DNA of 64,000 bases from Vitrella brassicaformis CCMP3155 (lineage: Eukaryota > Protista > Chromerida), in contig CDMY01000399.1 in assembly GCA_001179505.1 (NCBI GenBank), forward strand, positions 1 to 64,000, read 5' to 3'. Made by a program: the position numbers and the translations under genes. The notes beneath the pieces were generated by a model. It was not told the origin of the DNA. It made no database searches and was given only the letters and a program-made list of their open reading frames with translations. Shown one piece after another: positions 1-54,741 of this stretch. Numbering within the stretch: position 1 is the first letter of the stretch; the number at the start of each line of letters is the position of its first letter.

Positions 1-507
1 AGAGATGAGGTCCTCAGGAAGCAGACCCGCCCGCTGCTGTGTCCGAGCATCGGCCGCATGATGAGCGCGGCAGGACACTTGAAAAGCATTCCAGCGCATC
101 AGCGCGACCGACAAACACTGCCCCCAATGGTTCATGACACCCTCATGAAAAAATGCACGGTCTTCTGCAGAGCTGGCGGGTGGGGGGACGCGCCGCTGCG
201 CCAGACGGCGAAGCAGAGTGGGAGACGGAAGAGCACTTGACCATCTGCAATGGGAACTGACAGAGTACGCGTCTTTTTGATCACCTGCAACGATGGCAGC
301 CAGCACGGCTGCCTGAAACAGGGGCATCGAGGCCGCGAACCTTGGAGGGGGGGATCTAAGCAGTCGCCAGACTCCGTGAAACGCTCTCTCGGAGATCTGA
401 CCTCAAATCCGCTCCAATCGCTCCCAGCCAAGGCTGCTTAGCTTTCTCTGAGCATTCACCGCTGATTTTCCACTCCGCAAGGACGGACCGAGCGCTCAGA
501 CAAAGCC

Positions 508-41507: not shown

Positions 41508-42566
41508 CTAGACCCTCACTCTCATGTTCTCATTGACCTCCTTCTCCAGGCCGAATCGCCTCAGCAAGCGGCGGAAGAGGCGCATCGACACGGGCAGACG
41601 GACGTCGAGCGGACATGATGCATCGGCAGCACATGGCTCAGTCGTGCAGAGCTCGATATTCGACCCGAAGCGCACCCTCACAAAGGCAGCAATGGTGTCG
41701 TCAGGCCGAAATCCACTGAGAATAACCAAGCGGCGGTAAGAACGACTCTTCCAGAGCCGGTAGCTGATAGCGATGCCCTCCTCGCCCGTGAGCTCATCAC
41801 TCATCCGACTGTCGCTCCTGTCGACGTGTACACTCAGCACGACCCTGGACGCCGAACGGGGGTCTCGTGCGACCCAGCACTGGAGCAGCATGTAGAGCAT
41901 CAGTGCTGTGAAGGATGGGAAGAGTTTGTTGTCGTCGATGACCACGGGATTCTGTTGGTTGTAGCCCTTTCTGTAGGGGTCGCCAGGTGGCAGCTTTTCT
42001 TTGTATTCGCCGATGATCGCCCTGTACAGCGGGTCGCCTCTGCACGCCACTCGATGACCAATGAGGGACAAATAGACCGTTTCTGTCAGAGACAGCCGCC
42101 GTGAGGCCTTCGTGCGCACATGAGCCGCCACCCATCGAGCTGACAGCACCACCGGCAGCGTCCTGTCAGCCATCAGCCGATAGTTGACGGCCAGCCGAAT
42201 GAAGGCCCCAATGTTCCTCCAGCCGTCGCCGCCTTGCTCCAGCACACGGGCGCACGCCAGGAAGTAGCCGAGACGGCTTGGACCACGCAGCCGGCGGGAA
42301 CACCACGCAAGTCGGCGGAAGATGGCAAGAAGTCCAGCTACATAACCACCAGCAGCCACATTCCCTCCGTACTCGCGGTCGATGTCGATGACGCCTCGGA
42401 GGGAATTGCCTTCAAGACGGGCATCGATGCGCTTCAGCAATAGATCAGCGGTGACGACAGAAATGTGGCTTTCTCGCGAGGTGCTGCGAAGCGCTGCCAA
42501 TTCACCCACGGACAGAAAAGGTACGAGCGCATTGTGCCACACATCGATGGGAAGCAGGTCTGTCAT
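41508..42566 (-). CDS. Intronless 352-aa lineage-specific protein with F-box-like N-terminus
   Basis: Uninterrupted ATG-to-stop ORF. DLLPIDVWHNALVPFLSVGELAALRSTSR fits the F-box pattern LP.E....I..FL....L..LR.vS. Confidence 0.75.
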   Translation of the reverse strand: MTDLLPIDVWHNALVPFLSVGELAALRSTSRESHISVVTADLLLKRIDARLEGNSLRGVIDIDREYGGNVAAGGYVAGLLAIFRRLAWCSRRLRGPSRLGYFLACARVLEQGGDGWRNIGAFIRLAVNYRLMADRTLPVVLSARWVAAHVRTKASRRLSLTETVYLSLIGHRVACRGDPLYRAIIGEYKEKLPPGDPYRKGYNQQNPVVIDDNKLFPSFTALMLYMLLQCWVARDPRSASRVVLSVHVDRSDSRMSDELTGEEGIAISYRLWKSRSYRRLVILSGFRPDDTIAAFVRVRFGSNIELCTTEPCAADASCPLDVRLPVSMRLFRRLLRRFGLEKEVNENMRVRV

Positions 42567-43061
42567 TTCGAGCTGCCGCCATGCCCATCAGGGTTTGGTA
42601 ACCCTGTACACCTAACCCTGAATGAGAGTGCAAAATAATAGCTGTCAGCACCGGTGCATGTGTAAGTTCATAGTGTGTGTGGTCTGGATCCGGATGTGGT
42701 TTTGCGATGAGGATGATCCTGGCTGCAGCCAATGGCCGTCACGTGTACCAGAGTATGAGTGGATGTGTCGTCGTGGGTCAATCCGACCGTTGTGTATGCA
42801 TCAGCTCAACCATTTAATTTGCACGGGACAGACACTTCATGTCGTCCATGATGTATAAATGGACAATATTAATAGGAAACACAGAACAGGCCAATCTCAA
42901 CAGGTCAGAGCATGTTGCAGATGGCACACATATCTCCTACCGCCAAAAATGTCAAACACACATCGACAAAGACCCATTGCAGATGACAAAGAAAGGACCT
43001 ATCAGCAGTCGACAGACAAGTCAGCGACATGTCTCTCGCACCCGCAGCAACACTTGGTCTA

Positions 43062-46000
43062 TCAAGAGAAGACCGCCTGAAAAGCGTCGCTCCAGGCTAC
43101 GCTCCACCTGAGACACAACAAGCAACATGGAGACGGAGAATAGAAATCGTGAGAGGCGCGGTAGGAGGGGAGGCCACTCGTTTGTGTGTACCTCCAGTAT
43201 GCTCTGAACACACGAGAGTTCACACCAGCAGCACCCCACAGCCAATACACAATCCTGCGCGGCACGAATGCACACGGACAGTCAGGAGTGGTTGTGTCTC
43301 CCCTATTGCTTGGGTGTGTGTGCGTGCCTTGTGTCCAGGTTGGACAGGAGAGTGTATGGCATGTGCGCGTCCAGCGGCTCGTCCGAGTCGGTGATCACCA
43401 TCCCATTCGCCACCAGGTGCGAGTCCAGCGTGTAGATCAGCTCCAAACCAGACAACTGAAAACGAGAAACCGGCAATTTCTTTTGAAAGTGGCATCCAGG
43501 CGTACACGTGCTTTTACCTGTGTTGATCTTCTCGCACCAGTGACGCGGGCAGGGCCAGACGGCCAGGAAATCGAGGCATTTGGTGGCGCGGCGGGCGACA
43601 CGGCCGCCTCAGTGACATTGCTCCTTCCTGCCGCACTGTCGCCCCCTCCTCTTCTGTGCCAACATCGTGATGGCATTTCTTGCGCGGCGTCTGGCTCTCC
43701 TCCGGAATGGCGGCTGGGCGGCCCTACTGTCTCAATCCAGTCGCCAGGCATCACCTGATCGGCACTGACGACATGCCGGCCCCTCCCTCTTCTCACCACA
43801 GGCAGCCTGTGAGAGGGCGACAGACGGAGAGACACCGATGCCGACGATGAGGAGCATGGTGGCGGTGCATCCTCAGTCCTTGTGGCCTCGATGTCGATCA
43901 CACGAGTCGGCCTCACTGCACACAAAGGGTGCACAGACGCAGGCAGCCACTTATGGAATACAAAGAGGTAGACGTGTGTGCGTGTTGTCCCTGACGTACT
44001 TGGGTACGACTCCCTGAAGTACACCTCTGTCAGTCTGGGCTGCCCTCCTGCGTTCCCGTCGTATGACAGTATCCGATCGCCCACACGCACCTCAGACGCC
44101 GCCACGGCCTCCAGCGGCTGAAACGGCTTGGTTGCTCTCTTTTCCGCTTTCAAAGCCTCCTTGTCCGGCCTTTTGGCCATGATCCCAACACCCAGCAACA
44201 GATCGATAAGGCGACCGATGACCAGGAAGAGTGACATGACACGACTCACTTCGCCGAGACTGCTACGGCGAAAGAAGTGAGCCTCAGTGTTTCCTCCCCT
44301 GTGTTGGAACGAGTGGTGCAGGCGGGAGCTCAGCGATTGAAATGATGACAACGGATCTCCTGTGTTGGATAATCGGACCAGCGGCCGTGGTGTCTCGTTG
44401 TGTGTCGGGACCCTCCAGATGGTGGCATTGGGGTCGATGCACGTTTTCTGCGAAAAGGACTGTGCGCAATTGAGCGGCTCGTCAGGCTGGCCGACCCACG
44501 TGCCCCAGAGACACTGGTAGTCTACAGCACAAACACACACACGCACACATACAGACACACTTACATTCGCTGTGTCGAAGCGAAGCGTGTATCTTCGACG
44601 TACGTTTGCCTGATCTCTCGCCGTGGAGTCTCGCCATCGGGTTGGCCATCTGTTGTGGCCAAAACCACTTGAAGTAATAGACATGCCTACATGACAGACA
44701 GACAGATACACGTCAGCCAGCGTCAATGGATGGATGGAGGGATGGAGGGACGGAGGGATGGAGGGATGGAGGGATGGGTGGCGTGTCGACATACACGCTG
44801 CTGGGGGGCCCGATGCGGAAGATTCTCCAGATTTTGACTACCGTGTTGACGGCCCAGGCTATCACGGCGGGTCCACCCTCATAGGGCGCTCGCGGCGGCA
44901 TGATTCCTCATAGGGTTTCTTGCCTATACCGGTCTCTATCGTTCGCCGACGCTGCAAACAACCTGCGTGGACGGGTAAAGTCATGACAAACACATAGGGG
45001 AGGGAGGGAGGATGGGTGGACAGACAGATTTTGTCCGTCTGTCTGTCTGTCTGTCTGCCTGTCTGTATGCCTGACACACTCTGTCATTCATTTGTTACCG
45101 AAGCCGCCGCCTCTGACAGTGATGTTCCTTCCGGGCACGTCTCTCATCCACTCATCACCGTGGTAAGGGGAAACGCCGGTCTGCGTCCCCCAGTACTGGG
45201 CTGTGATCGTGACCCTCCCTGACGAACCAACAAACGAAGCAAGGAACAGACAATGAACGCAGAAATTGCAGAACGCTGCGCTTACCTGCGCTGTGAGAAA
45301 GGGTGAATAGTTTCTCCTGGTCCTCCTGCAAGGAAAACACCACAGTGTGTGACGAATCAATCATTGGTCGAGCAACTGGCAAGCTGCCGTTGCGTCATTT
45401 TCCTCTTGGTGTGCACTGCCAGGCAAAGCAAGCGCACCGACCATGAAATCCGCGAGGGTGAAGTTCTCCGTTCTCCCTGACAGACAGGAGAGGTACACAT
45501 GGGGGGATCCATGCACCCGTCATTCATCTACGTATCGGTGTGTGTGTCTCTCTTGAACCATTTCTGTCGCTCACCAACGAAGTCGTCCTTAATCGGGTCT
45601 TGATCCCACAGAGCCAGGTACCACCACTTTGTACGGCTGAACATTATCGGGCCAAGCTGCGGATCGGCAGGCACATGTGGGATGCATGAAGGGGAGCAAG
45701 CGCCATTGGTTCGTCTTTGTGGTCGTCCAATCCACCGCCACACCCACCCTGTTGGGCCATTGTTGAACGATGGCCTCCTTCCCACTGCCTCTGTGTTCTT
45801 CGCCTTTGACGACCGGCAGGCTGTGCGGCGACTCAAGCCTGCACTTGCTCTCCTTCATCTCGGCCTCACACAGCCTCCCGTAGAAGTCACCCACGCCGAC
45901 CAGGTCATCGTCACCCAGCCGGTCCTTGTCACGACATATCCTGAATCCCAACGCATGCATGCATATCTCCATATGTGCCTGTTGATTTCGTCACTCAGTC

Positions 46001-49000
46001 GACGGCGTACATACATCGGGCCGACTTTGAGGAAAGCTGTCCTGGGCTCGGCCTCCTGTATGGGGCCTTCCGATTCGTTCTTCTGCCCGCCGATCCTCCC
46101 CGCGATGTCCCATTCGGCTGCAACGGTCTTGTTTAGCTTGGGCTGGGGCTTCTCGCAGCCAGGTGTGTAGCAGAAGGCGTAGTATCTCGCCCGATGCCGC
46201 CGCACCCATGGGCGCTGCTTGACAAAGTCGTCGTAGATGAGGTTTTCGAACTCGACAGACAGGGGGCCGGCCACATTGTAGCGGACCGTCTTGTGGGGCT
46301 CGCGAAAGGGCAGGGGGCACATCTCTGGTGGGTGCAGTGTGTGTGGGAGAGACACACACAGACAGGCAGGGGATGCATATGTGCTGTCCCGCCGTGGTTC
46401 GCTCACTGATGCAGGTGAAGGGTGTAGTGAGGTAGCCGTTAAAACACTGAGTCTTGAATGCAGGCCGGTCATCCCAAGTGGCTTGCTGCGGCTCAGGCAG
46501 GTAACCATTGGCACACCGCACCTCTGTCTCGGCTCCAGGTACCACAAGCCCATGCATTAGGGGCAGGGGGTAGCCTTTCTCTGGGTGGTAGTAGTTCTGC
46601 TCCCTCCCGTCGGCGTACACCATCTCATAACCAAACGGCTCGCACATCGCTGCGGTGGACAGACAGGATCACACAAACTCTGCTGTGTCCCGTCCGCTGC
46701 TTCCCCCTCCCTCCATCCCTTGGTTACGGTGGCACTGCATCTCGGGCTCAGACCAGTGGCCGTTGTTGCAGTGGACCTCTGACGTATAAGGCGGATCGAG
46801 CACGTTGGTGGCAAATGTCCACCTGAAACCAATCACACACGCACGGACATCATCAGCATTGCCCGTAGCACCAAACCAGCATACATACTGACTGACTGAC
46901 CTGCATTTGAGTCTGTCTGCGGGTGCCTTTCCGCCTTCAGCCGGGTAGACAAATGAGTCGTTGGTGCAGCAGGAGACCGTCCGTGAGGCGCCGTTCCGCA
47001 CAGTGCCGGTGTTGTAGACGGTGTCCATGCCTGTCCCGCTGCGCTCGACAATCATGGAGATGCCGAAGCGGCTGTCGTGGGTGTAGTCCTCCTCAGGCAC
47101 GTACTCTGGGCAGTTGGCTGTGAGTGAGTGGGGACAAAGCACATATGTGCCAACGGGGATTCTCTGTCTGAATGTCTCTCTCTCTCTCTCTCTCTATGGC
47201 TGACGTTCACAGATGAGGAGACGCGTGCTGTAGTCGCCATCCTCGCATGTGATAAACTGCCGGTCAGGCATACCGGACTGAGTGAACACCATCGACTGCC
47301 CATCCATCGAACATGCCATCGAGTCACACAAAGACACACCCATCTTGATTGACAATTTCTCTTGACTCTTCCTCCATCTGTGCTTACGTCTGAGTGCCTG
47401 ATGGCGCATCGTATCTGAAGTGACTTGCCGGCCGGGAACAGTGATTCCGTGAGGTGGTCCCGTGGCCGGACGATCTGATACCGCGACTGGTTCATGACGG
47501 CGATGTCATTCGCCAGCGCCCACTGGACGTAATCGATGCACATCTCTGACGAACACGGTGAATCGACAGACACAGAGAGACAGACAGACAGACAGACATG
47601 TGTCGCTTCCACCCTCTGTGCGTGTGTGTGTGTGTGTCTGTGTGTGTGTTGCCCCCCCTCAGTGCTCACTTCTGCATCTCAGTTCCATCGGCCACCAGTG
47701 TCCATCGTTGCACTCGATGGTCTCGGGCTCTGAGCCGCTGATGGGCGAGAAGGTGCGTGCGCAAGACACCGATATGACGGTGCCGTGCCGCAGCGACTCG
47801 GACCCGCCCTCGATGGCGTATTTGGCCATCGACTCGCCCATGCCATCGAAATACACCTGCAACTCAGGGCAGTCACCTAGACAGGAGACCAAGCAAAAAC
47901 AGGTTGTTTGTCTGACGGCTCTCGAGCGTGTGTGTGCTGACGTGCGTACGTCTGCACTGTATGCCGGTGAGTGTCCAGACGCCATCCTGACAGTCAGTGC
48001 TGTCCATCGGCCGCGAGAGAGTCGACATGAATCCCCCTGTGGTGTTGCAAGTGACTAGAAGCCGGTTGCCGTGGATGTAGAGAGGCAGCGACCTGTTCTT
48101 CTCGTCGACTCGGGGCACGTTCTCCCCCGACGGCGGCGTGTTGGCGAGTGAGTCTGATATGACGTAGCGGAATGGCTCCTCGTCTGGGCGGTACAGACGA
48201 AGGTCTATCTGGGCCAGGCACGGACCTGCGCACACACACACATCCATCCATCCATCCATATCTCACTGTCCGTCTTGGTGTCTGTCCGTCTGTGTGGTGC
48301 TGTCATATACGTGGGCATGATAGTGTGGACCGTTCCCACTCGCCGTCGTTGCACCTGACCGTCTCGTTCTCTGGCGCCGGGTGGGGGCAGTACTTGGACT
48401 CGCACTTGAGGATGAATGCCGTCCCGTGGCGCGAGCAGCTGTCACCACCCGCATAAAAGGGAGACGCCTTGTCCTTCTGCACACACAACATACCACCGCC
48501 TGTGGTGCCGTGGTGGGGTGTGCCTCGATCGCCTGCTTGCTTGTCTGAGTTGGTCTTTGGTCATGCATGGCCCGGGCGGCTCGCACTTCATGCGGTTCCC
48601 TCTTGTCGGCTTCACAAACGGCGGACACCGACGATGGCAGAAGTGCTGCATGTCGGTCCACACAGCGTTGCGGCACTGCACGTCGCACTGGTGCTTGCTG
48701 CAGTCCTCCACGTCCCTTGGAATCCACTCGGGATCGGTCTCACGCATGGTCGCCAGATGCTTCCGCATCTGTGTCATGGGGCTGGCAAGGTCATACTCGC
48801 CCTTGCACATCAGCTTCATGAACGAGCCGTCGTCGTAGAGCTTCGTTCGGTCGAGCGGCTCGTAGAAGAACCGATCAAGAGTCTCGTTGAGCGTGTCGGC
48901 TCCCCCTCCCCCGCCGACAGAGAATTGAGGGCCGGGTGCCTGCTCCTCCTCCTCGTCTTTCCCTGGCTCAGACGGACGGCCGCTGAAGAGCACCTCATAC

Positions 49001-52000
49001 CGCGCTGGGCTTAGCTCCCAGAAGGCGTCGCCGCGACACTGGGCTGCACACAGAGACGAGAAAGCGCCCTCATCTGTTGATTTGCTTCTCTGTCTCCTTC
49101 GTGCTGTGCTCACGTTTGCACCGGATGGCCTGTCGCGACCAGGTCCCATTGAGGCACCGCACCATGTCTGGCTCGTCGGACTTCCACTCGGGGTCGCTCC
49201 AGCCCTCCACACACCTGATGAACCGCTGGCTATTGTGGCGGAAGTAGGGCTCCACCGCTCGCATGGCGGCCTTGGCCTCCGCTGATGGACTGGCCATGTA
49301 GTTGAAACCCTGCTGGTCGACCTTGAGCTCCTCTGGCGCGAATGTGGGAACCGGGGAGGAGACATACATTTGGGGTGGGCTGAAGGGCGACTGGTAGGGG
49401 AGACACCGCTCTGTGCAAAGCAAACACACCAGACGACAGATGGCTGCGCTGCTGTGTGAGCGTGTGAATGGTCGGCTGGTCGGTTAGTTACTTCTGCATT
49501 GCATGGCGATGTGTTCGAACCGGCCGTTGTCACACGTGATGGCCTCTACGTGGTCATAGCCCACAGGGGGCAGCGCAGTGAAACCACTGACGATCTCGTC
49601 GCTGTCTGAAGGGCACGGAGACATGCGAATGGTGAAGGGGTGAGGGGGCAGGTGGAAGAGCGTGTTTGCCTTTGCATTGAATGTAGGCGGTCTCCCCGTG
49701 CGTGTACAAGGCTTTGCTGTCGTCTGATGGGGGCGCATACACCACACCAGGCCGGAAGAACCGAGACAGCGGGGCCACACACGGATCTGCACACACATCA
49801 CATACACCCAGACACCGCAGCCACTGCTGCATTGTGTTCCACCCACCCCGCCACCCATCCGTCTATGGCTGACCTTTGCAATCGAACTCCCTCGGCGTCC
49901 AGTTGCCGTCGAGGCAGCTCAGTGTGGTGCATTCGTTGCTGCTGAAGGCCGGCTTCCAAGTGGTGCCCCTATCGTCCCCATCCGCCCCACAGCTGATGCT
50001 CCGCCACTCGCGCGGCTGCACATCGGGTGTCTCATCCTTGGCACACCCGAACTTGACGCAGGACGAGTGGCGGGGAAAGTCGCTCAGATGGACGCCGAGG
50101 GCGAGGGCGGCGGGTGTGGACCCCTGTGGGCGGACGATGCCCTCACAGGCCCGATCATCCGTCAGCTGGGTGGCGTCTTCCAGCTGACGGAAGGCGTACC
50201 TCTTGAGGTCGACCACCTCACTAAGATCGCGACACGTCTCTGCATACACAGGCAGGGAGGGGCGATCGTATGTGTGTCAGCGTGATGGGCCTCGCTCACT
50301 TTTGCAGGTGAGATAGGGATCGGGTTCGCTCCATTTGCCGTTCTGGCAGGCGATGGTTGCGATGTCGACGTTCTCCCCGGCCCTGTGTTTGGTTCCCTCT
50401 GTGATGTTGAAGTAGCCCCTTTTGTTTGCGCATCTCACTCGAATCCTCTCTTGGTGGTTGTACAGGTCCTTGTACTTGTCCAGCCGCTCAAACGACAATA
50501 CCGCTTCGGGTGTGGCCGTGAGCTCGGGGGCCTTGCACTCCCCTGACACAGACACACACACACGCACACACACGAACACCTCCTGCCCCTTTTCCCCCTC
50601 TGTCTATGGATGTGTGTGGGGTACTTACTTGTGCAGACGAATGGTGGTGGCACGGGCGTGAAGGTGCCGTTAGAGCAGACAGCCGAGACGAAGCCCGGCT
50701 GGGCTGGGGAAGGGGCAGTGTCGTTGACGAGGGAGCACCTGACAGTGACGTGTGTGCCGTGGGGATACGGGAGGGTGGCGTGGCCTTGGGGCGGCTGGAT
50801 GGAGTAGAACGAGGGGTTGCGGATCTCGTGAAGCGGGTAGTCCTCACACGGAGCTGACACACACACATCCATCCATCCGACCATGCCATGATACACACGT
50901 CCATGGATGCACCTTTCCAGGGAGCTCTGTGTGTCCCTTCCCCCCCCCTCCCCCCCGACGCCCCACCCACCCATGCACTCGAAGGGCGCCCCGGTGATGC
51001 GCCCCCGGTCACATGTGAGGACGTCGGTGCGGTCCACGGCACCCCCGTTGGGCGCCAACTTCTTCCTCTGGCTGCACTGCAAAGTCAGCTGCATCCCGTG
51101 GGGCTGGAAGGGCTGCTGCAGCAGCTCCTGTATCTTGGCCGCATCGCTGACGGCCACACTCTCCCATGGCACGGCGCCGCGCGCAGCGGGGAACGCGGCG
51201 GGGTCGAGGGACGATGCGCGGCGAGTCATCTTGGGGTAGGTGTAGGCCTCCGTTGGGAAGAGGGGCTGGACGGTGGGGCAGTCAGGTCCGCAGATAAGGT
51301 TCTGTTTGCTCCACTGCCCCTCGTTGCAGACGATGTCCATCTCATCCGGGCCCACGATCGGGTGGAAGTGCTTGGACGTGGCGCATGCGATGGTCACCCT
51401 CGTGCCGTGGGGGGACGGGCCACGCAGCACCGACTCGTCGCTGATGACGTACATGTCGCTCACCGCCCCTGGTTGGGGCACGCTGTTCTCCGGCCACACG
51501 TAGGTCGTTTGGGGCGCCAGGGTCGCCGAGACGTCCTTCAAGGAAAAGGGAGGGCACCCCACTGACACACAGAGACAAAAAGGAATCGGAGGCAGCCATG
51601 AGAGTGTCTTCCTCAGTGTACGGTGGCAGGCAATGTGCAAAGGCGTCCAGTGGCCCTCGACGCACGCCAGCTCCTGCTGCTCATTGGCCGACGCCAGATT
51701 GCCCGTCGTCTTGCTGGGGTCCCTCTGGCACTCGATCGTCACCTTGAAGCCGTATCTGAACGAGGCCGCCTTCAAGAGCTCATCCTGCGGCGGGTGCGTC
51801 ATGAAGCGGTCGTCCGCTAGTTTCTGCCAGGGGCCGCAGTCCTCCTTGCATCTCAAGGTGAGGTCCGTCCACTGCCCGTTGCTGCACACGGTGGTCTGGT
51901 GGTCGGGCATGTTCTCATCGGCGGAGTGGGAGTTGGCGGCACACCGAACGTTGGCTGTGGTGGAGTGGCGGAATGGGGGGTGGGGGGGACCGGTGAATGG

Positions 52001-54741
52001 CACATTGTACTCGAGGCTGTACTTGATCGCCTCCTCTTTCTTGATCGGCGGGCCGCTCGTGCACATTGCTGGGCGCACAGAGGGAGGGAGACGGGTGTCG
52101 CGTAAATGTGTGTCTCTGCAAGGGGGCCTGGCCTACTGGAGCATCTGTAGTCCTGTCGCGTGTACTCGTCTTCAGGCGGCCACGCCCTCCCCGTGCACTT
52201 GACCAGCTCCACCTCAGGGTCACCCACCGCACGCGCAAACCCCCCCGTCTCGTTGCATGTGATCCGCATTTGGCCAAGGTAAGGCACCTCGTACTCGGTG
52301 GCATTGACCCCCTCCAGCACGTAGTGATGCACATTCTGCCGAAGACGGAACAATGGGCAGTGGCCTGACACACACACACGCCAGGCACCCACCATGTTTG
52401 CTGGGGCGCGGTGCACGGCTTTGCTTACCGGCGCACTCGAGCAAGAGAGCGGTCCACTCGCCGCCGACGCAGTAGATGTACTGGAACTTCTGTTGGAATG
52501 CGGCATTGACGGGCTGCGCGTAGTCGGGCATGCACATGACCTTCCGCGATGCCCCCTCCATCCTGCCGATGTCCTGCCCCTCGACCTTGTACCGCACAGC
52601 CGATATCGGGTGCTCGTAGAAGGGCGGCTCCAGGATGTCATGCGGACACATCTCCTTGCACTGCAAGTCCATCACGTCCAGTATGCCGTCGTTGCAGAAG
52701 AGCGCCGTCTCGCTTTGCATCCCCAGTGGCGGGAGGTAGCTGTCGCCGCACTGCAGCTGGGCGCTCTCGCCGTGCCGCAGCTTGGTCGGCCGACGGGGGC
52801 TTAGCAGGCGATAGAGAGGCCGCTGCTCCAACATCGGTGCTGTTCCACCAATCCAGCCTAGTGGGGTCACTTGCACACACACATATATAGAGAGAGAAAG
52901 ATGACAACAGGGCGAGATTGGATGGCGTGTTGTGTGATTGTTCCGCTCACTGAGGCAATCCAGAATCCGTGGCGGGAGCTCCCCGCTCTTAACTGCCCCA
53001 CACTTGACAATGTCCGTGTCGACGAAGCCGTGGTAGGTGGCACCCGACTTGGTGGTGGGCAGCCCCTCATCCCCTGTGGCGCACTTGAGCGTGAGCACAC
53101 CACCGAAGGGCATGGATCGCTCCAGTGCTCTGTAGGTGAAGGGAGACGTGTCACTGGAGCGGCCGAGGTATGCTTCTGAGGGGGCGCCCTGGCTGGCCAG
53201 GGCCTTGATGTAGGGCGGGCACTTCTCTGGCACACGTGAGACATCACGATATGCAGTCGGGCTGCATTTTGTGTCTCTGTCTCTCTGTGTGTGTTACTTT
53301 TGCAGTTGCACGAGCAGTCGTCTGGCGTCTTTTCGGGGTCGCACTCCTCCGTCTCGGCATCGACCTCACCATCGCCACAGCGCTGAACGAGATCTGACCC
53401 ACACACACACAGAGACGGCCACATGAGAGAATGAATGTGTGTAGGCATCAGATCAGCTCTCTCTTTGCCCACTGAGAAGGTCGGCCGCTTGGTCCGTAGC
53501 TCCCTTCATGTCTTTGACGAGCCGCCCCTGGTTAGTGTAGTGCATGTACCGCACCCGGCCCCTAAAGCAATTATTCTGAAAGTATTCAGAAAAACACCAA
53601 TCTATTCGGGCAGTTTATTGCATCATAGCTCAGAAGTATATCTGATAAGGCTTTCTTACGCCCCGGTGATCGCACCCCAGCGACAGGGGGCTCGGCGTCA
53701 GCATGTTCGCCGCGATTTTGGCCGGCACAGCCACCTCCCCCGCCAGCCTGCCCATCTTGAAGATCTGCAGTGTCGACTGCGACATCACAAAGTGGTAGAG
53801 AAACCCAGCGGCCGACCGCCAGCAGACGCGGATCATGCCTTTGGGCGGGTCGGGGTCCGTTACATTGGTGGGCGTGTGAATGTCGATCAAACCAAGGTAC
53901 ACCGACTCAGGATCCACCTCGATCGTCGTGCCCTCAGCGTCTTGATGGACGGTGTATGCGGCCGATGCGCCCAGCCGGAAGCCCCAGAAGTTGTCGAGAA
54001 AGACGACTGGCTGCCCTGGTGGGGGAGGCCGGTCGAACGCCAGGAGAAGGGCGAAGGTGAATCCCTCGCTTTGGGACTCGGCCCATCGGTAGCAAACGCG
54101 CAAATGGCCGCTTGGTGGCGTGATGAGATACCGACCAGGCCCGAATCCTGCATTAAGATTGACATTACATCATGAGAGCAGTGAGTGCAGGACTTAACTG
54201 ACTTCACTCACTTGTCCTTACCAATCCATGTGACGACACCGCCTGTGTGTGGGTCATCTCTGCAGCCACAAGGAAACCCGGCACAGCCACGTACGGTACC
54301 GAAATGTCAGTCTGTGTGCATTGATAGCATATGAGCTTACGACTGGTGCAGCAGCGGCGGATGGTCCTCTGCATCAAACACCTGCATATTGACGCCCAGC
54401 GCCCGGTCCCGCCAGCTCCACGGCAGCCACTTGTCCTCAGCCGAAACCTTCAGCGATATCACCTCCGCCCGACGCACATCGCACTCGGGCACCTTGTCGC
54501 CCTTCTCCAGCTCAGCCTCCACCTCCTTCCACCGATTCTCGCCTATCTGCGCCCGCAGCACATCCGAATCGGACGGCGCCGGCTGCTGCTGCCGTACCAA
54601 TTTATGGCTCTGTATTGCGCTGAGCCGCCCGACCTCTGCACTGCTGCCTGGGCCGCTTTGCAGTGGCTGGCTGGCCGATACAGTGATGAAGACAGCGCAG
54701 GTGACGGCGAAGATGGGGAGCGAAATGCGCCGGGCCGCCAT
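43062..54741 (-). CDS. Giant secreted protein: signal peptide, cysteine-rich CGDG..EECD unit, ~20 Sushi/CCP-like repeats, C2-like segment, C-terminal Hedgehog-type Hint/Hog domain
   Basis: Signal peptide MAARRISLPIFAVTCAVFITVSA. Repeats C..HG..(V/L).(I/V).C..C..G.W....C across 46.3-53.2 kb. DKDRLGDDDLVG and WDQDPIKDDFVG. Hint blocks TCIDPNATIW, SEVRVGDRILSYD, LRLSPSHRLPV, VSADQVMPGDWI, HLVANG. Junctions near 44.9 kb and 53.6 kb are not fully resolved. Confidence 0.78.

What the first reader, a model, noticed from the sequence alone, without database searches (positions are those of the whole stretch)
43062..44520. Hedgehog-type Hint/Hog autoprocessing domain at the C-terminus of a giant Sushi-repeat surface protein
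Seen: the last exons encode ..SQKT-CIDPNATIW (Cys codon 44439-44441, at the Hint N1 position), SEVRVGDRILSYD..GQPRLTEVYF, LRLSPSHRLPV (His codon 43809-43811; block-B TxxH with Thr->Ser), VSADQVMPGDWI and RVTGARRSTQ|LSGLELIYTLDSHLVANG. A Trp-rich amphipathic tail follows (IVYWLWG..AYWRWSVAW..*). Established: Hedgehog Hog domains self-cleave before this Cys, and a C-terminal recognition region attaches a sterol to the N-terminal product. Hint proteins are known in protists, including alveolates. Inference: this alga may make a multi-thousand-residue adhesin-like ectodomain that cleaves itself and is possibly lipid/sterol-anchored, using Hedgehog chemistry on a Sushi scaffold. The residue before Cys is Thr rather than Gly, and the terminal SCY is replaced by TDSD, so the nucleophile or adduct may differ.
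Basis: partly seen in the sequence, partly recalled or inferred. Interest (0 to 1): 0.87.

Follow-up and report, generated by a model that had tools for sequence, protein, structure and literature searches.

The report
Hedgehog-type self-cleaving domain, uncoupled here
The stretch really encodes a Hedgehog-type self-cleaving (Hint/Hog) domain from a small Vitrella family of giant sushi-repeat secreted proteins, but at this locus a frameshift and stop codons separate it from the giant protein in the only transcript form seen.

Summary
The window is Vitrella brassicaformis CCMP3155, contig CDMY01000399.1.

**What holds up**
- All quoted motifs and codon coordinates are correct. RNA contigs confirm the exon joins.
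- The domain is a true Hint/Hog module.
  - An AlphaFold model superposes on Drosophila Hedgehog-C (1AT0/6TYY) at Z 20, rmsd 2.0 Å, over 143 of 145 residues.
  - A two-helix tail follows, like the sterol-recognition region.
  - The 30 best Swiss-Prot model matches are all Hedgehog proteins.
- Paralog CEM03304.1 passes the Pfam Hint threshold and also hits Pfam Sushi.
- Three paralogs (2679-2743 aa) carry giant and Hog in one frame.

**What does not hold here**
- With the observed splice joints, the giant ORF stops at 44862-44864.
- The Hog ORF lies in another frame of the same exon.
- GenBank annotates two genes, of 2435 aa and 400 aa. UniRef already names the 400-aa one "Hint domain-containing protein".
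- Against the paralog, this junction has a 1-nt deletion, TGG>TGA, AGG>ATG and a 36-nt insertion.

**Open question**
- The Hog ORF stays open for 450 codons and is as constrained as the upstream exons (Ka/Ks 0.18 on both sides). How it is translated is unresolved.
- A roughly 100-aa insert follows strand 1 in all four paralogs.

The scan noted another, broken copy of this family elsewhere in the genome (s1-212008).

The parts
44795..44962 (-). Junction exon. The giant ORF (frame A) ends here at TGA 44862-44864, followed by TAG. The Hog ORF (frame B) opens after TGA 44908-44910, with its first ATG at 44899-44901.
   Evidence: RNA joints 44960>45097 and 44685>44794; three-frame reading. Comparison with paralog locus L002 shows a 1-nt deletion, TGG>TGA, AGG>ATG and a 36-nt insertion. 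The annotated giant gene ends at 44862.
44604..44686 (-). Exon of the conserved pre-Cys module (HVYYFKWFW...GERSGK). It contains the annotated start ATG of CEM10019.1 at 44647-44649.
   Evidence: Joint 'side 82' fits the donor at 44603 (GTACGT). P0001 and P0002 both read GERSGK|HYQC.
44442..44521 (-). End of the last sushi-like half-unit (YQCLWGTWVGQPDEPLNC) and the linker ending in ...SQKT, the residue before the scissile bond.
   Evidence: Translation; invariant Cys, Trp and Cys columns in four paralogs.
44412..44441 (-). Hint strand 1, CIDPNATIWR. The Cys codon 44439-44441 is the predicted nucleophile (equivalent to Hh Cys258, intein Cys1).
   Evidence: Model residues 9..313 align to Hh residues 258..402 and to intein residue 1 onward. 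pLDDT is 88 for this strand. C, I, D and W are invariant.
44130..44411 (-). Insert of about 95 aa between Hint strand 1 and the next strand. Sequence is variable and model confidence is low. It includes a hydrophobic helix, VMSLFLVIGRLIDLLLGVGIMA, at 44175-44240.
   Evidence: Continuous in RNA contigs of X5 and X1. Present in all four paralogs but poorly conserved. pLDDT below 50. Hydropathy.
44000..44129 (-). Hint strands KPFQPLEAV...VRVGDRILSYD...RLTEVYFRES. The invariant Glu codon 44010-44012 lies at or next to the position of Hh Asp303.
   Evidence: The Glu-to-Asp303 mapping is by motif spacing only and is uncertain by one residue.
43518..43915 (-). Central Hint exon. Block B is LRLSPSHRLPV (Ser 43818-43820, His 43809-43811). 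VSADQVMPGDWI follows, then a low-complexity loop, then ARVTGARRSTQ.
   Evidence: RNA joints 43915>44000 and 43455>43518. Invariant L.LSPSH.LP. The paralog's Pfam Hint match covers this region.
43328..43455 (-). Last Hint strands, LELIYTLDSHLVANGMVITD. The Asp codon 43387-43389 equals Hh Cys400 and the intein terminal Asn. Next come the invariant D.DEP.D motif and the start of tail helix 1.
   Evidence: Model residue 311 aligns to Hh residue 400 and to the last residue of inteins. Invariant columns.
43062..43254 (-). Two short exons (43192-43254 and 43062-43107) encoding the Trp-rich two-helix tail, an SRR/ARR-like helix-loop-helix, and the stop at 43062-43064. The intron 43255-43327 that precedes them is GC-AG.
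   Evidence: RNA joints. Helices 321-342 and 345-365 in the model. Matches to Hedgehog models run on into the region after Hint.
44963..54741 (-). Upstream giant gene (annotated 2435 aa) with a signal-peptide-like start and many four-Cys sushi-like units. It is collinear with paralog P0002.
   Evidence: tblastn of P0002 covers 54699 to 43185 in order. The unit at 52424-52723 aligns to the Pfam-Sushi-positive unit of P0003. No Pfam Sushi hit on the window's own ORFs.

Best explanation
Window 43062-44907 (minus strand) encodes a genuine Hedgehog-type Hog module, that is, a Hint fold followed by a two-helix Trp-rich tail. It belongs to a Vitrella-specific family in which this module sits at the C-terminus of secreted giant sushi-repeat proteins of about 2,700 aa.

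Proposed mechanism (inferred by homology, not shown). The invariant Cys of CIDPNATIWR attacks the preceding Thr-Cys peptide bond in an N-to-S acyl shift. The invariant block-B His and Ser (SPSH) and a nearby invariant Glu assist. The resulting thioester is resolved by water or by a lipid or sterol held by the helical tail. This releases the upstream polypeptide and possibly lipid-anchors it.

At this locus the module is uncoupled from the giant ORF. A 1-nt deletion and stop codons in junction exon 44795-44962 end the giant protein at 44862-44864 and leave the Hog ORF in another frame. The Hog ORF is still intact, correctly spliced, transcribed and under purifying selection. It is therefore probably still translated, by a route not yet seen: a minor in-frame splice form, or its own start codon at 44899-44901.
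For: Fold: the AF2 model core has pLDDT 75-89. Foldseek's best hit is 1AT0, Hedgehog-C (E 1.2e-6, TM by target 0.78). VIA-align gives Z 20.4, rmsd 2.0 Å, 143 of 145 residues, model 9..313 = Hh 258..402. The 30 best Swiss-Prot AFDB matches are all Hedgehog or warthog C-terminal regions and extend past Hint into the tail helix. Atlas structure neighbours are Hint/Hedgehog clusters.

Sequence: paralog P0003 hits Pfam Hint PF01079 at 33-34 bits (cut-off 29.7) and Pfam Sushi at 6e-19. Four paralogs share invariant C-I-D, GD, VYF.E, L.LSPSH.LP, VAN, D.DEP.D, NLDTR and YWRW. UniRef names P0001 'Hint domain-containing protein'.

Transcription and splicing: spliced X5 contigs.

Uncoupling.

Constraint: the ORF is open for 450 codons over 7 exons. 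Ka/Ks against the paralog is 0.177 just downstream of the break and 0.175 upstream. Only 5 of 69 otherwise conserved sites are changed, against 16 of 80 in the fused paralog P0002.
Against: - The window's own protein gets no Pfam Hint hit and no PDB sequence hit.
- The alignment behind the model has only four sequences.
- No cleavage, adduct or protein evidence exists.
- The residue before Cys is Thr (Arg in P0003), not Gly.
- The Hh Asp303 equivalent is at best a Glu, and its mapping is uncertain.
- A 95-aa insert splits the first hairpin.
- Every in-frame rescue splice site found is weak: acceptor scores are -6.0 and 0.9 against mostly 8-16 for real ones, and the donor scores 2.8 against 4.6-11.6. 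None was seen in RNA contigs.
- No slippery site for frameshifting was found.
Confidence: 0.6

Rival explanations
1. Orphaned relic. After a recent frameshift or nonsense mutation, the Hog exons are untranslated 3'-UTR of a Hog-less giant sushi protein and are on their way to decay.
For: There are two independent disabling differences against the fused paralog, a 1-nt deletion and TGG>TGA. The only transcript form seen is out of frame. Candidate rescue splice sites are weak. The scan's note s1-212008 reports another copy of the family as a transcribed pseudogene (not checked here).
Against: There are 450 open codons across 7 correctly spliced exons. Ka/Ks of 0.18 directly downstream of the break equals the upstream value. 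This copy has fewer private changes at conserved sites than the intact fused paralog P0002.
Confidence: 0.25
2. Gene fission. The locus now makes two products. One is a Hog-less giant adhesin. The other is a small stand-alone Hog precursor starting at the new ATG 44899-44901 (or at 44647-44649 as annotated), which cleaves off only the short conserved pre-Cys module.
For: AGG>ATG creates a start codon two codons after the frame-B stop, with A at -3. A 36-nt insertion adds a hydrophobic stretch (PAVIAWAVNTVV) right after it. GenBank annotates a separate 400-aa gene.
Against: There is no evidence of a separate transcript start. The Hog exons sit on the same spliced contig as upstream giant exons. 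A short upstream ORF overlaps the ATG. The N-terminus is only weakly signal-like. Reinitiation after a 7-kb ORF is unlikely.
Confidence: 0.2
3. The Hint fold is retained as a non-catalytic structural or binding module, with no self-cleavage in any family member.
For: The -1 residue is non-Gly, Ser replaces Thr in block B, Asp replaces the motif-J Cys, there is no clear Asp303 equivalent, and a large insert follows strand 1.
Against: The nucleophile Cys, the block-B His and the Ser are invariant in four paralogs that are only 34-61% identical. Burglin 2008 (PMC2362128) reports the motif-J Cys replaced by Ser, Thr or Asp in moss and red-algal Hog domains.
Confidence: 0.15
4. It is an intein-like or BIL-type element that cleaves or splices at its C-terminal Asp rather than acting like Hedgehog.
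For: The Asp of ITD aligns with the terminal Asn of many inteins, and intein Z-scores (up to 19.5) are close to Hedgehog's 20.4. The motif VANG.V resembles intein block G.
Against: The +1 residue is Ser, Gly, Ala and Ser in the four paralogs, so there is no conserved C-extein nucleophile. The penultimate His is absent. Only Pfam PF01079 is hit, not the intein, PT-HINT or Vint models. No intein host protein reached the 30 best Swiss-Prot matches. The domain is C-terminal with a helical tail, as in Hog.
Confidence: 0.05

Closest known systems
Hedgehog C-terminal autoprocessing (Hog) domain, e.g. Drosophila Hh-C (PDB 1AT0, 6TYY)
   Same: Same Hint fold (Z 20.4, rmsd 2.0 Å, 143 of 145 residues). 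Cys at position 1. Block-B hydroxyl-x-x-His. C-terminal position in the protein. Followed by a helix-loop-helix tail like the SRR described in PMC7906309. In the paralogs the cargo is secreted.
   Different: About 13-20% sequence identity. Thr or Arg instead of Gly before the Cys. Ser for Thr in block B. Asp in place of Cys400 (SCY becomes TDS). Glu at or near the Asp303 position. A 95-aa insert after strand 1. No sequence similarity in the tail. The cargo is a 2,300-aa sushi array, not the HhN signalling domain.
Protist Hog proteins (Burglin 2008, PMC2362128): dinoflagellate, Cryptosporidium, red-algal, moss, cercozoan and other Hog domains with unrelated N-terminal regions
   Same: Hog domain on lineage-specific secreted N-terminal regions, alveolates included. 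The motif-J Cys is often replaced by Ser, Thr or Asp.
   Different: No sushi-repeat cargo is described there, and no paper with both 'Hog domain' and 'Sushi' was found. This family was found only in Vitrella. The insert in the first hairpin is not a described feature.
Paralogs in the same genome: CEM24571.1 (P0002), CEM03304.1 (P0003), CEL93093.1 (P0004)
   Same: Collinear giant sushi-like array, pre-Cys module, Hog module and tail. They are 38-61% identical to the window's copy in ungapped Hog columns.
   Different: In the paralogs giant and Hog are one annotated ORF. Here they are split by a frameshift and stops and annotated as two genes (2435 aa plus CEM10019.1, 400 aa).
Inteins and bacterial intein-like (BIL) domains
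   Same: Hint fold, Cys1, block B His.
   Different: No terminal His-Asn, no conserved +1 nucleophile, not inserted in a host protein, no homing endonuclease.

Membership tests
Hint/Hog (Hedgehog-type autoprocessing domain) | Hint fold | tested here: met
   AF2 model against 1AT0/6TYY: Z 20.4, rmsd 2.0 Å, 143 of 145 residues. Foldseek E 1.2e-6. The 30 best Swiss-Prot AFDB matches are all Hedgehog-family.
Hint/Hog (Hedgehog-type autoprocessing domain) | Match to Pfam PF01079 (Hint module) above the gathering score | tested here: inconclusive
   The window's own protein has no hit. Paralog P0003 scores 33-34 bits against a cut-off of 29.7 when the C-terminal region is scanned alone, and 28.6 bits as the whole protein. 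Homology of the window's copy to P0003 is clear.
Hint/Hog (Hedgehog-type autoprocessing domain) | Nucleophilic Cys at Hint position 1 (motif A) | tested here: met
   Model residue 9 (Cys, 44439-44441) aligns to Hh residue 258 and intein residue 1. It is invariant in four paralogs.
Hint/Hog (Hedgehog-type autoprocessing domain) | Block B Thr-x-x-His | tested here: met
   S-P-S-H is invariant in four paralogs. Ser replaces Thr; the His codon is 43809-43811.
Hint/Hog (Hedgehog-type autoprocessing domain) | Catalytic Asp (Hh Asp303/D46) for adduct transfer | tested here: inconclusive
   An invariant Glu (44010-44012) in VYF(R/K)E(S/T) lies at or one residue from that position by motif spacing. No residue-level structural alignment was available.
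Hint/Hog (Hedgehog-type autoprocessing domain) | Motif J (S-C-Y) at the end of Hint | tested here: not met
   T-D-S is at that position; the Asp aligns to Hh residue 400. Burglin 2008 reports Ser, Thr or Asp at this Cys in moss and red-algal Hog domains, so this is a known variation and not an exclusion.
Hint/Hog (Hedgehog-type autoprocessing domain) | C-terminal adduct/sterol recognition region after Hint | tested here: inconclusive
   The model has two helices, 321-342 and 345-365, at pLDDT 55-77. The tail is strongly conserved. Hedgehog model matches extend into the first helix. No sequence similarity to motifs K or L was tested.
Hint/Hog (Hedgehog-type autoprocessing domain) | Same polypeptide as a secreted N-terminal cargo | tested here: not met
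   Not met at this locus in the observed transcript. Met in paralogs P0002, P0003 and P0004; P0002 and P0003 have signal-peptide-like starts.
Hint/Hog (Hedgehog-type autoprocessing domain) | Autoproteolysis and ester-linked adduct | not testable with these tools
   Needs biochemistry.
Intein / BIL | Terminal (His-)Asn plus a conserved +1 Cys, Ser or Thr | tested here: not met
   Thr-Asp is at that position. The +1 residue is Ser, Gly, Ala and Ser in the four paralogs.
Vint (VWA-Hint) | Pfam Vint/Vwaint match with an upstream VWA domain | tested here: not met
   No PF14623 or PF14624 hit in any family member at E up to 10.
Sushi/CCP repeat protein | Pfam PF00084 match in the upstream repeats | tested here: inconclusive
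   Paralog P0003 hits at 6.3e-19 in 4 stretches. The window's ORFs have no hit at E up to 0.1. Window 52424-52723 aligns to the Sushi-positive unit of P0003 (37% identity, E 2e-17). The AF2 model of one window unit was too poor to use (pLDDT 49).

The most novel reading that the evidence does not exclude
The locus is a live switch and not a wreck. A minor in-frame splice form, or a newly born start codon with a hydrophobic leader, would let the alga make two things from one gene. One is a Hog-less, freely secreted giant sushi protein. The other is a Hog-bearing form that cleaves itself and ester-links the ectodomain (or only the short pre-Cys module) to a membrane lipid or sterol. That would be Hedgehog chemistry used as a surface anchor in the closest photosynthetic relatives of apicomplexans. 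Two candidate splice routes would restore the frame. One is a 71-nt intron at 44859-44929. The other uses the acceptor at 44858 with the normal donor.
Probability: 0.25. Interest if true: 0.7.

Novelty: new variant of a known kind. Interest (0 to 1): 0.5.

Why it matters
Hog domains are known on many unrelated protist proteins, but what they attach and to what is unknown outside animals. This is a small, tractable family in which the cargo is a 2,300-aa sushi-repeat ectodomain in a chromerid, the free-living sister of apicomplexan parasites. If the chemistry works, it would be an alternative to GPI for anchoring giant adhesins. It would also give a non-animal system for asking which lipid a Hog tail selects.

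The window's copy adds a natural experiment. The same module is uncoupled from its cargo yet still conserved.

The domain itself is already flagged by automatic annotation (UniRef 'Hint domain-containing protein'). The news is therefore the architecture, the insert and the broken junction, not the existence of a Hint domain.

Tried and rejected
- Pfam on unspliced ORF pieces of the Hint region and of seven upstream ORFs gave nothing.
- A profile of three paralogs, and P0003 alone, against PDB sequences gave nothing relevant.
- Word-indexed homology searches with the family profile, with the P0002 C-terminal region and with the P0003 Hint region found only Vitrella paralogs or nothing.
- I first supposed an intron between the Cys strand and GDRIL (a GTGAGT at 44244-44249). 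Continuous RNA contigs of X5 and X1 reject it.
- I first placed the donor of the intron before exon 44000-44521 at 44564, giving a 43-nt intron. The joint's 'side 82' and the annotated proteins place it at 44603 instead.
- I considered reading the hydrophobic helix in the insert as a transmembrane span. It is not conserved in hydrophobicity across paralogs, and it would separate strand 1 from the rest of the fold.
- A -1 ribosomal frameshift between 44910 and 44862 was considered. No slippery heptamer is visible.
- The alternative acceptor at 44951 leads to an earlier stop.
- The AF2 model of one sushi-like unit was too poor (pLDDT 49) for a fold search.
- Ka/Ks over the Hint core is uninformative because Ks is saturated at 1.46.
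Full report
**Where we are.** The protein encoded on the minus strand at 43062-44649 is GenBank CEM10019.1 (UniProt A0A0G4FBM5) of Vitrella brassicaformis CCMP3155, contig CDMY01000399.1. Vitrella is a chromerid alga, a free-living relative of apicomplexans.

**Checking the observation.**
  - the Cys codon at 44439-44441;
  - GDRIL within 44067-44090;
  - SPSH at 43809-43820, with the His codon at 43809-43811;
  - VSADQVMPGDWI at 43734-43769;
  - LELIYTLDSHLVANGMVITD at 43387-43446;
  - the stop at 43062-43064.
- I laid contigs of four public runs on 42900-48800.
  - Runs X2 and X3 are unspliced and DNA-like.
  - Run X5 gives spliced contigs whose skipped parts are GT..AG on the minus strand, so it is RNA.
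  - The exons are 44795-44962, 44604-44686, 44000-44521, 43518-43915, 43328-43455, 43192-43254 and 43062-43107 plus 3'-UTR. Intron 43255-43327 is GC-AG.
- They also show that exon 44000-44521 is one piece. The Cys strand and the GDRIL strand are therefore separated by about 95 translated residues, not by an intron. A contig of run X1 also runs through 44191-44346.

**Is it a Hint domain?**
- Pfam finds nothing in the window's own sequence, spliced (P0001) or not.
- An exhaustive phmmer search of 1.84 billion representatives found only the window's own protein and two giant Vitrella proteins. A word-indexed search added a third.
- All three giants carry the same C-terminal region.
- One of them, P0003 (CEM03304.1), matches Pfam Hint PF01079 at 33-34 bits, above the 29.7 cut-off. 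It also matches Pfam Sushi at 6.3e-19.
- The four C-terminal regions align with these invariant features: C-I-D...W at the start, GD..LS, VYF.E, L.LSPSH.LP, V.A..V..GD, VAN, D.DEP.D, NLDTR and YWRW.V.
- An AlphaFold2 model of P0001 residues 35-400, built on this four-row alignment, has a confident core (pLDDT 75-89) and four disordered loops.
- Foldseek against the PDB puts the 17-kDa Hedgehog autoprocessing fragment 1AT0 first (E 1.2e-6, TM by target 0.78). Inteins and BIL domains follow.
- VIA-align gives Z 20.4, rmsd 2.0 Å over 143 of 145 residues, with model residues 9..313 on Hedgehog residues 258..402.
  - The Asp of ITD (model residue 311) falls on Hh residue 400 and on the last residue of inteins.
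- Against Swiss-Prot AlphaFold models, the 30 best matches are all Hedgehog or warthog proteins. Those alignments run past the Hint fold into the first tail helix.
- The Hint/Hog assignment is therefore solid. The tail is two helices, the same arrangement as the helix-loop-helix modelled for the Hedgehog sterol-recognition region (PMC7906309).

**Which kind of Hint?**
- Only PF01079 is hit. The intein, PT-HINT and Vint models are not.
- The residue after the terminal Asp is Ser, Gly, Ala and Ser in the four paralogs. There is no conserved C-extein nucleophile and no His-Asn, so an intein-type reaction is unlikely.
- Replacement of the motif-J Cys by Ser, Thr or Asp is what Burglin (2008, PMC2362128) reports for moss and red-algal Hog domains. 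That paper also documents Hog proteins in dinoflagellates, Cryptosporidium and ciliates.
- The departures from Hedgehog are:
  - Thr (Arg in P0003) before the Cys;
  - Ser for Thr in block B;
  - an invariant Glu at or beside the Asp303 position, mapped by spacing only;
  - the 95-aa variable insert after strand 1, present in all four paralogs.
- The insert contains a hydrophobic helix in the window's copy, but its hydrophobicity is not conserved. I have no explanation for it.

**Is it the C-terminus of the giant protein?**
- In the family, yes. P0002, P0003 and P0004 are annotated as single proteins of 2679-2743 aa. P0002 and P0003 have signal-peptide-like starts.
- The window's gene is collinear with P0002 from 54699 to 43185.
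- A window unit at 52424-52723 aligns to a Pfam-positive Sushi unit of P0003.
- At this locus, no, at least not in what is seen.
  - Joining the exons as the RNA contig does, the giant ORF runs into TGA TAG at 44862-44864 and 44859-44861, inside exon 44795-44962.
  - The Hog ORF is in another frame of that exon. It opens just after a TGA at 44908-44910.
  - GenBank agrees: a 2435-aa gene ends at 44862, and a separate 400-aa gene follows.
- Aligned to the paralog's DNA, the window's junction has a 1-nt deletion, TGG>TGA, AGG>ATG and a 36-nt insertion.
- RNA and DNA contigs show no indel against the window here. This is not an assembly error.

**Is the Hog ORF dead?** The evidence says not yet, and probably not.
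- It is open for 450 codons across seven correctly spliced exons.
- Against the paralog, Ka/Ks for the 89 codons directly downstream of the break is 0.177 (Ks 0.53). The sushi-like exons upstream give 0.175 (Ks 0.66).
- At sites where the other three paralogs agree, the window's copy differs at 5 of 69. P0004 differs at 4 of 68, P0002 at 16 of 80 and P0003 at 36 of 100.

**How it could be translated is open.**
- Three in-frame routes exist on paper:
  - the normal donor joined to an acceptor at 44906, a GAG site created by the TGG>TGA change;
  - the normal donor joined to an acceptor at 44858, the TAG of the giant's second stop;
  - a 71-nt intron at 44859-44929 that would remove the deletion and all the stops.
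- All of these sites score below the gene's real sites. With this many GT and AG pairs, such solutions are expected by chance.
- Alternatively, the new ATG at 44899-44901 could start a stand-alone precursor. It has A at -3 and is followed by a hydrophobic stretch that the insertion supplied.
- The X5 contig runs through the exon unbroken. Any in-frame form is therefore minor in that run.

**Known or new.**
- UniRef already calls P0001 'Hint domain-containing protein' and the giants 'Sushi domain-containing protein'.
- I found no paper that describes this family. No paper holds both 'Hog domain' and 'Sushi'. The Vitrella genome paper does not contain 'hedgehog' or 'intein', and the passages shown for 'Hint' did not concern the domain.
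- The scan itself noted the whole gene (s1-221635), the junction problem (s1-221926) and another, broken copy of the family on a different piece of the genome (s1-212008). I did not check that other copy.

**Verdict.**
- The fusion claim is right for the family but not for this locus as transcribed.
- Self-cleavage and lipid anchoring remain inference.
- It is a new architectural variant of a known kind, of moderate interest. The conserved but uncoupled Hog ORF is the one real puzzle.

Noticed in passing
window 46649-46730 and 46766-46784: Run X5 shows two splice forms at one intron (46649>46728, and 46649>46730 with two other letters), each at about depth 20. It also shows three base differences (T>C, G>C, G>C) at half depth nearby. 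This could be an allele, a paralog cross-match or alternative splicing.
   Followed up: no
window 45286-45940 versus P0002 residues about 2241-2250: The window's transcript has four short exons (about 115 aa, ICRDKDRLGDD...FTLSHSAG) that have no counterpart in the annotated paralog P0002. Either the paralog model skips exons or the copies differ here.
   Followed up: no
window 44522-44564, 44721-44782, 44995-45075: Introns around the junction carry simple repeats: a GT-rich run, (CCATCC)n and (CAGA)n. The reads tool skipped them as repeats.
   Followed up: no
window 43255-43327: A GC-AG intron, the only non-GT donor among 15 introns checked in this gene. It is confirmed by contigs of two RNA runs.
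   Followed up: partly
P0004 residues about 2311-2349: Paralog CEL93093.1 has a strongly hydrophobic stretch of about 35 aa (transmembrane-like) just before the pre-Cys module. The window's copy has only a short hydrophobic stretch there and P0002 has none.
   Followed up: no
window 41508-42566 (minus strand): A single-exon ORF of 352 aa directly downstream, annotated as a gene without any Pfam family.
   Followed up: no
alignment A2 (Hog regions of the four paralogs): The in-frame fused paralog P0002 has the most private changes among the three closer copies, 16 of 80 conserved sites. Its Hog module evolves faster than the uncoupled one in this window.
   Followed up: partly
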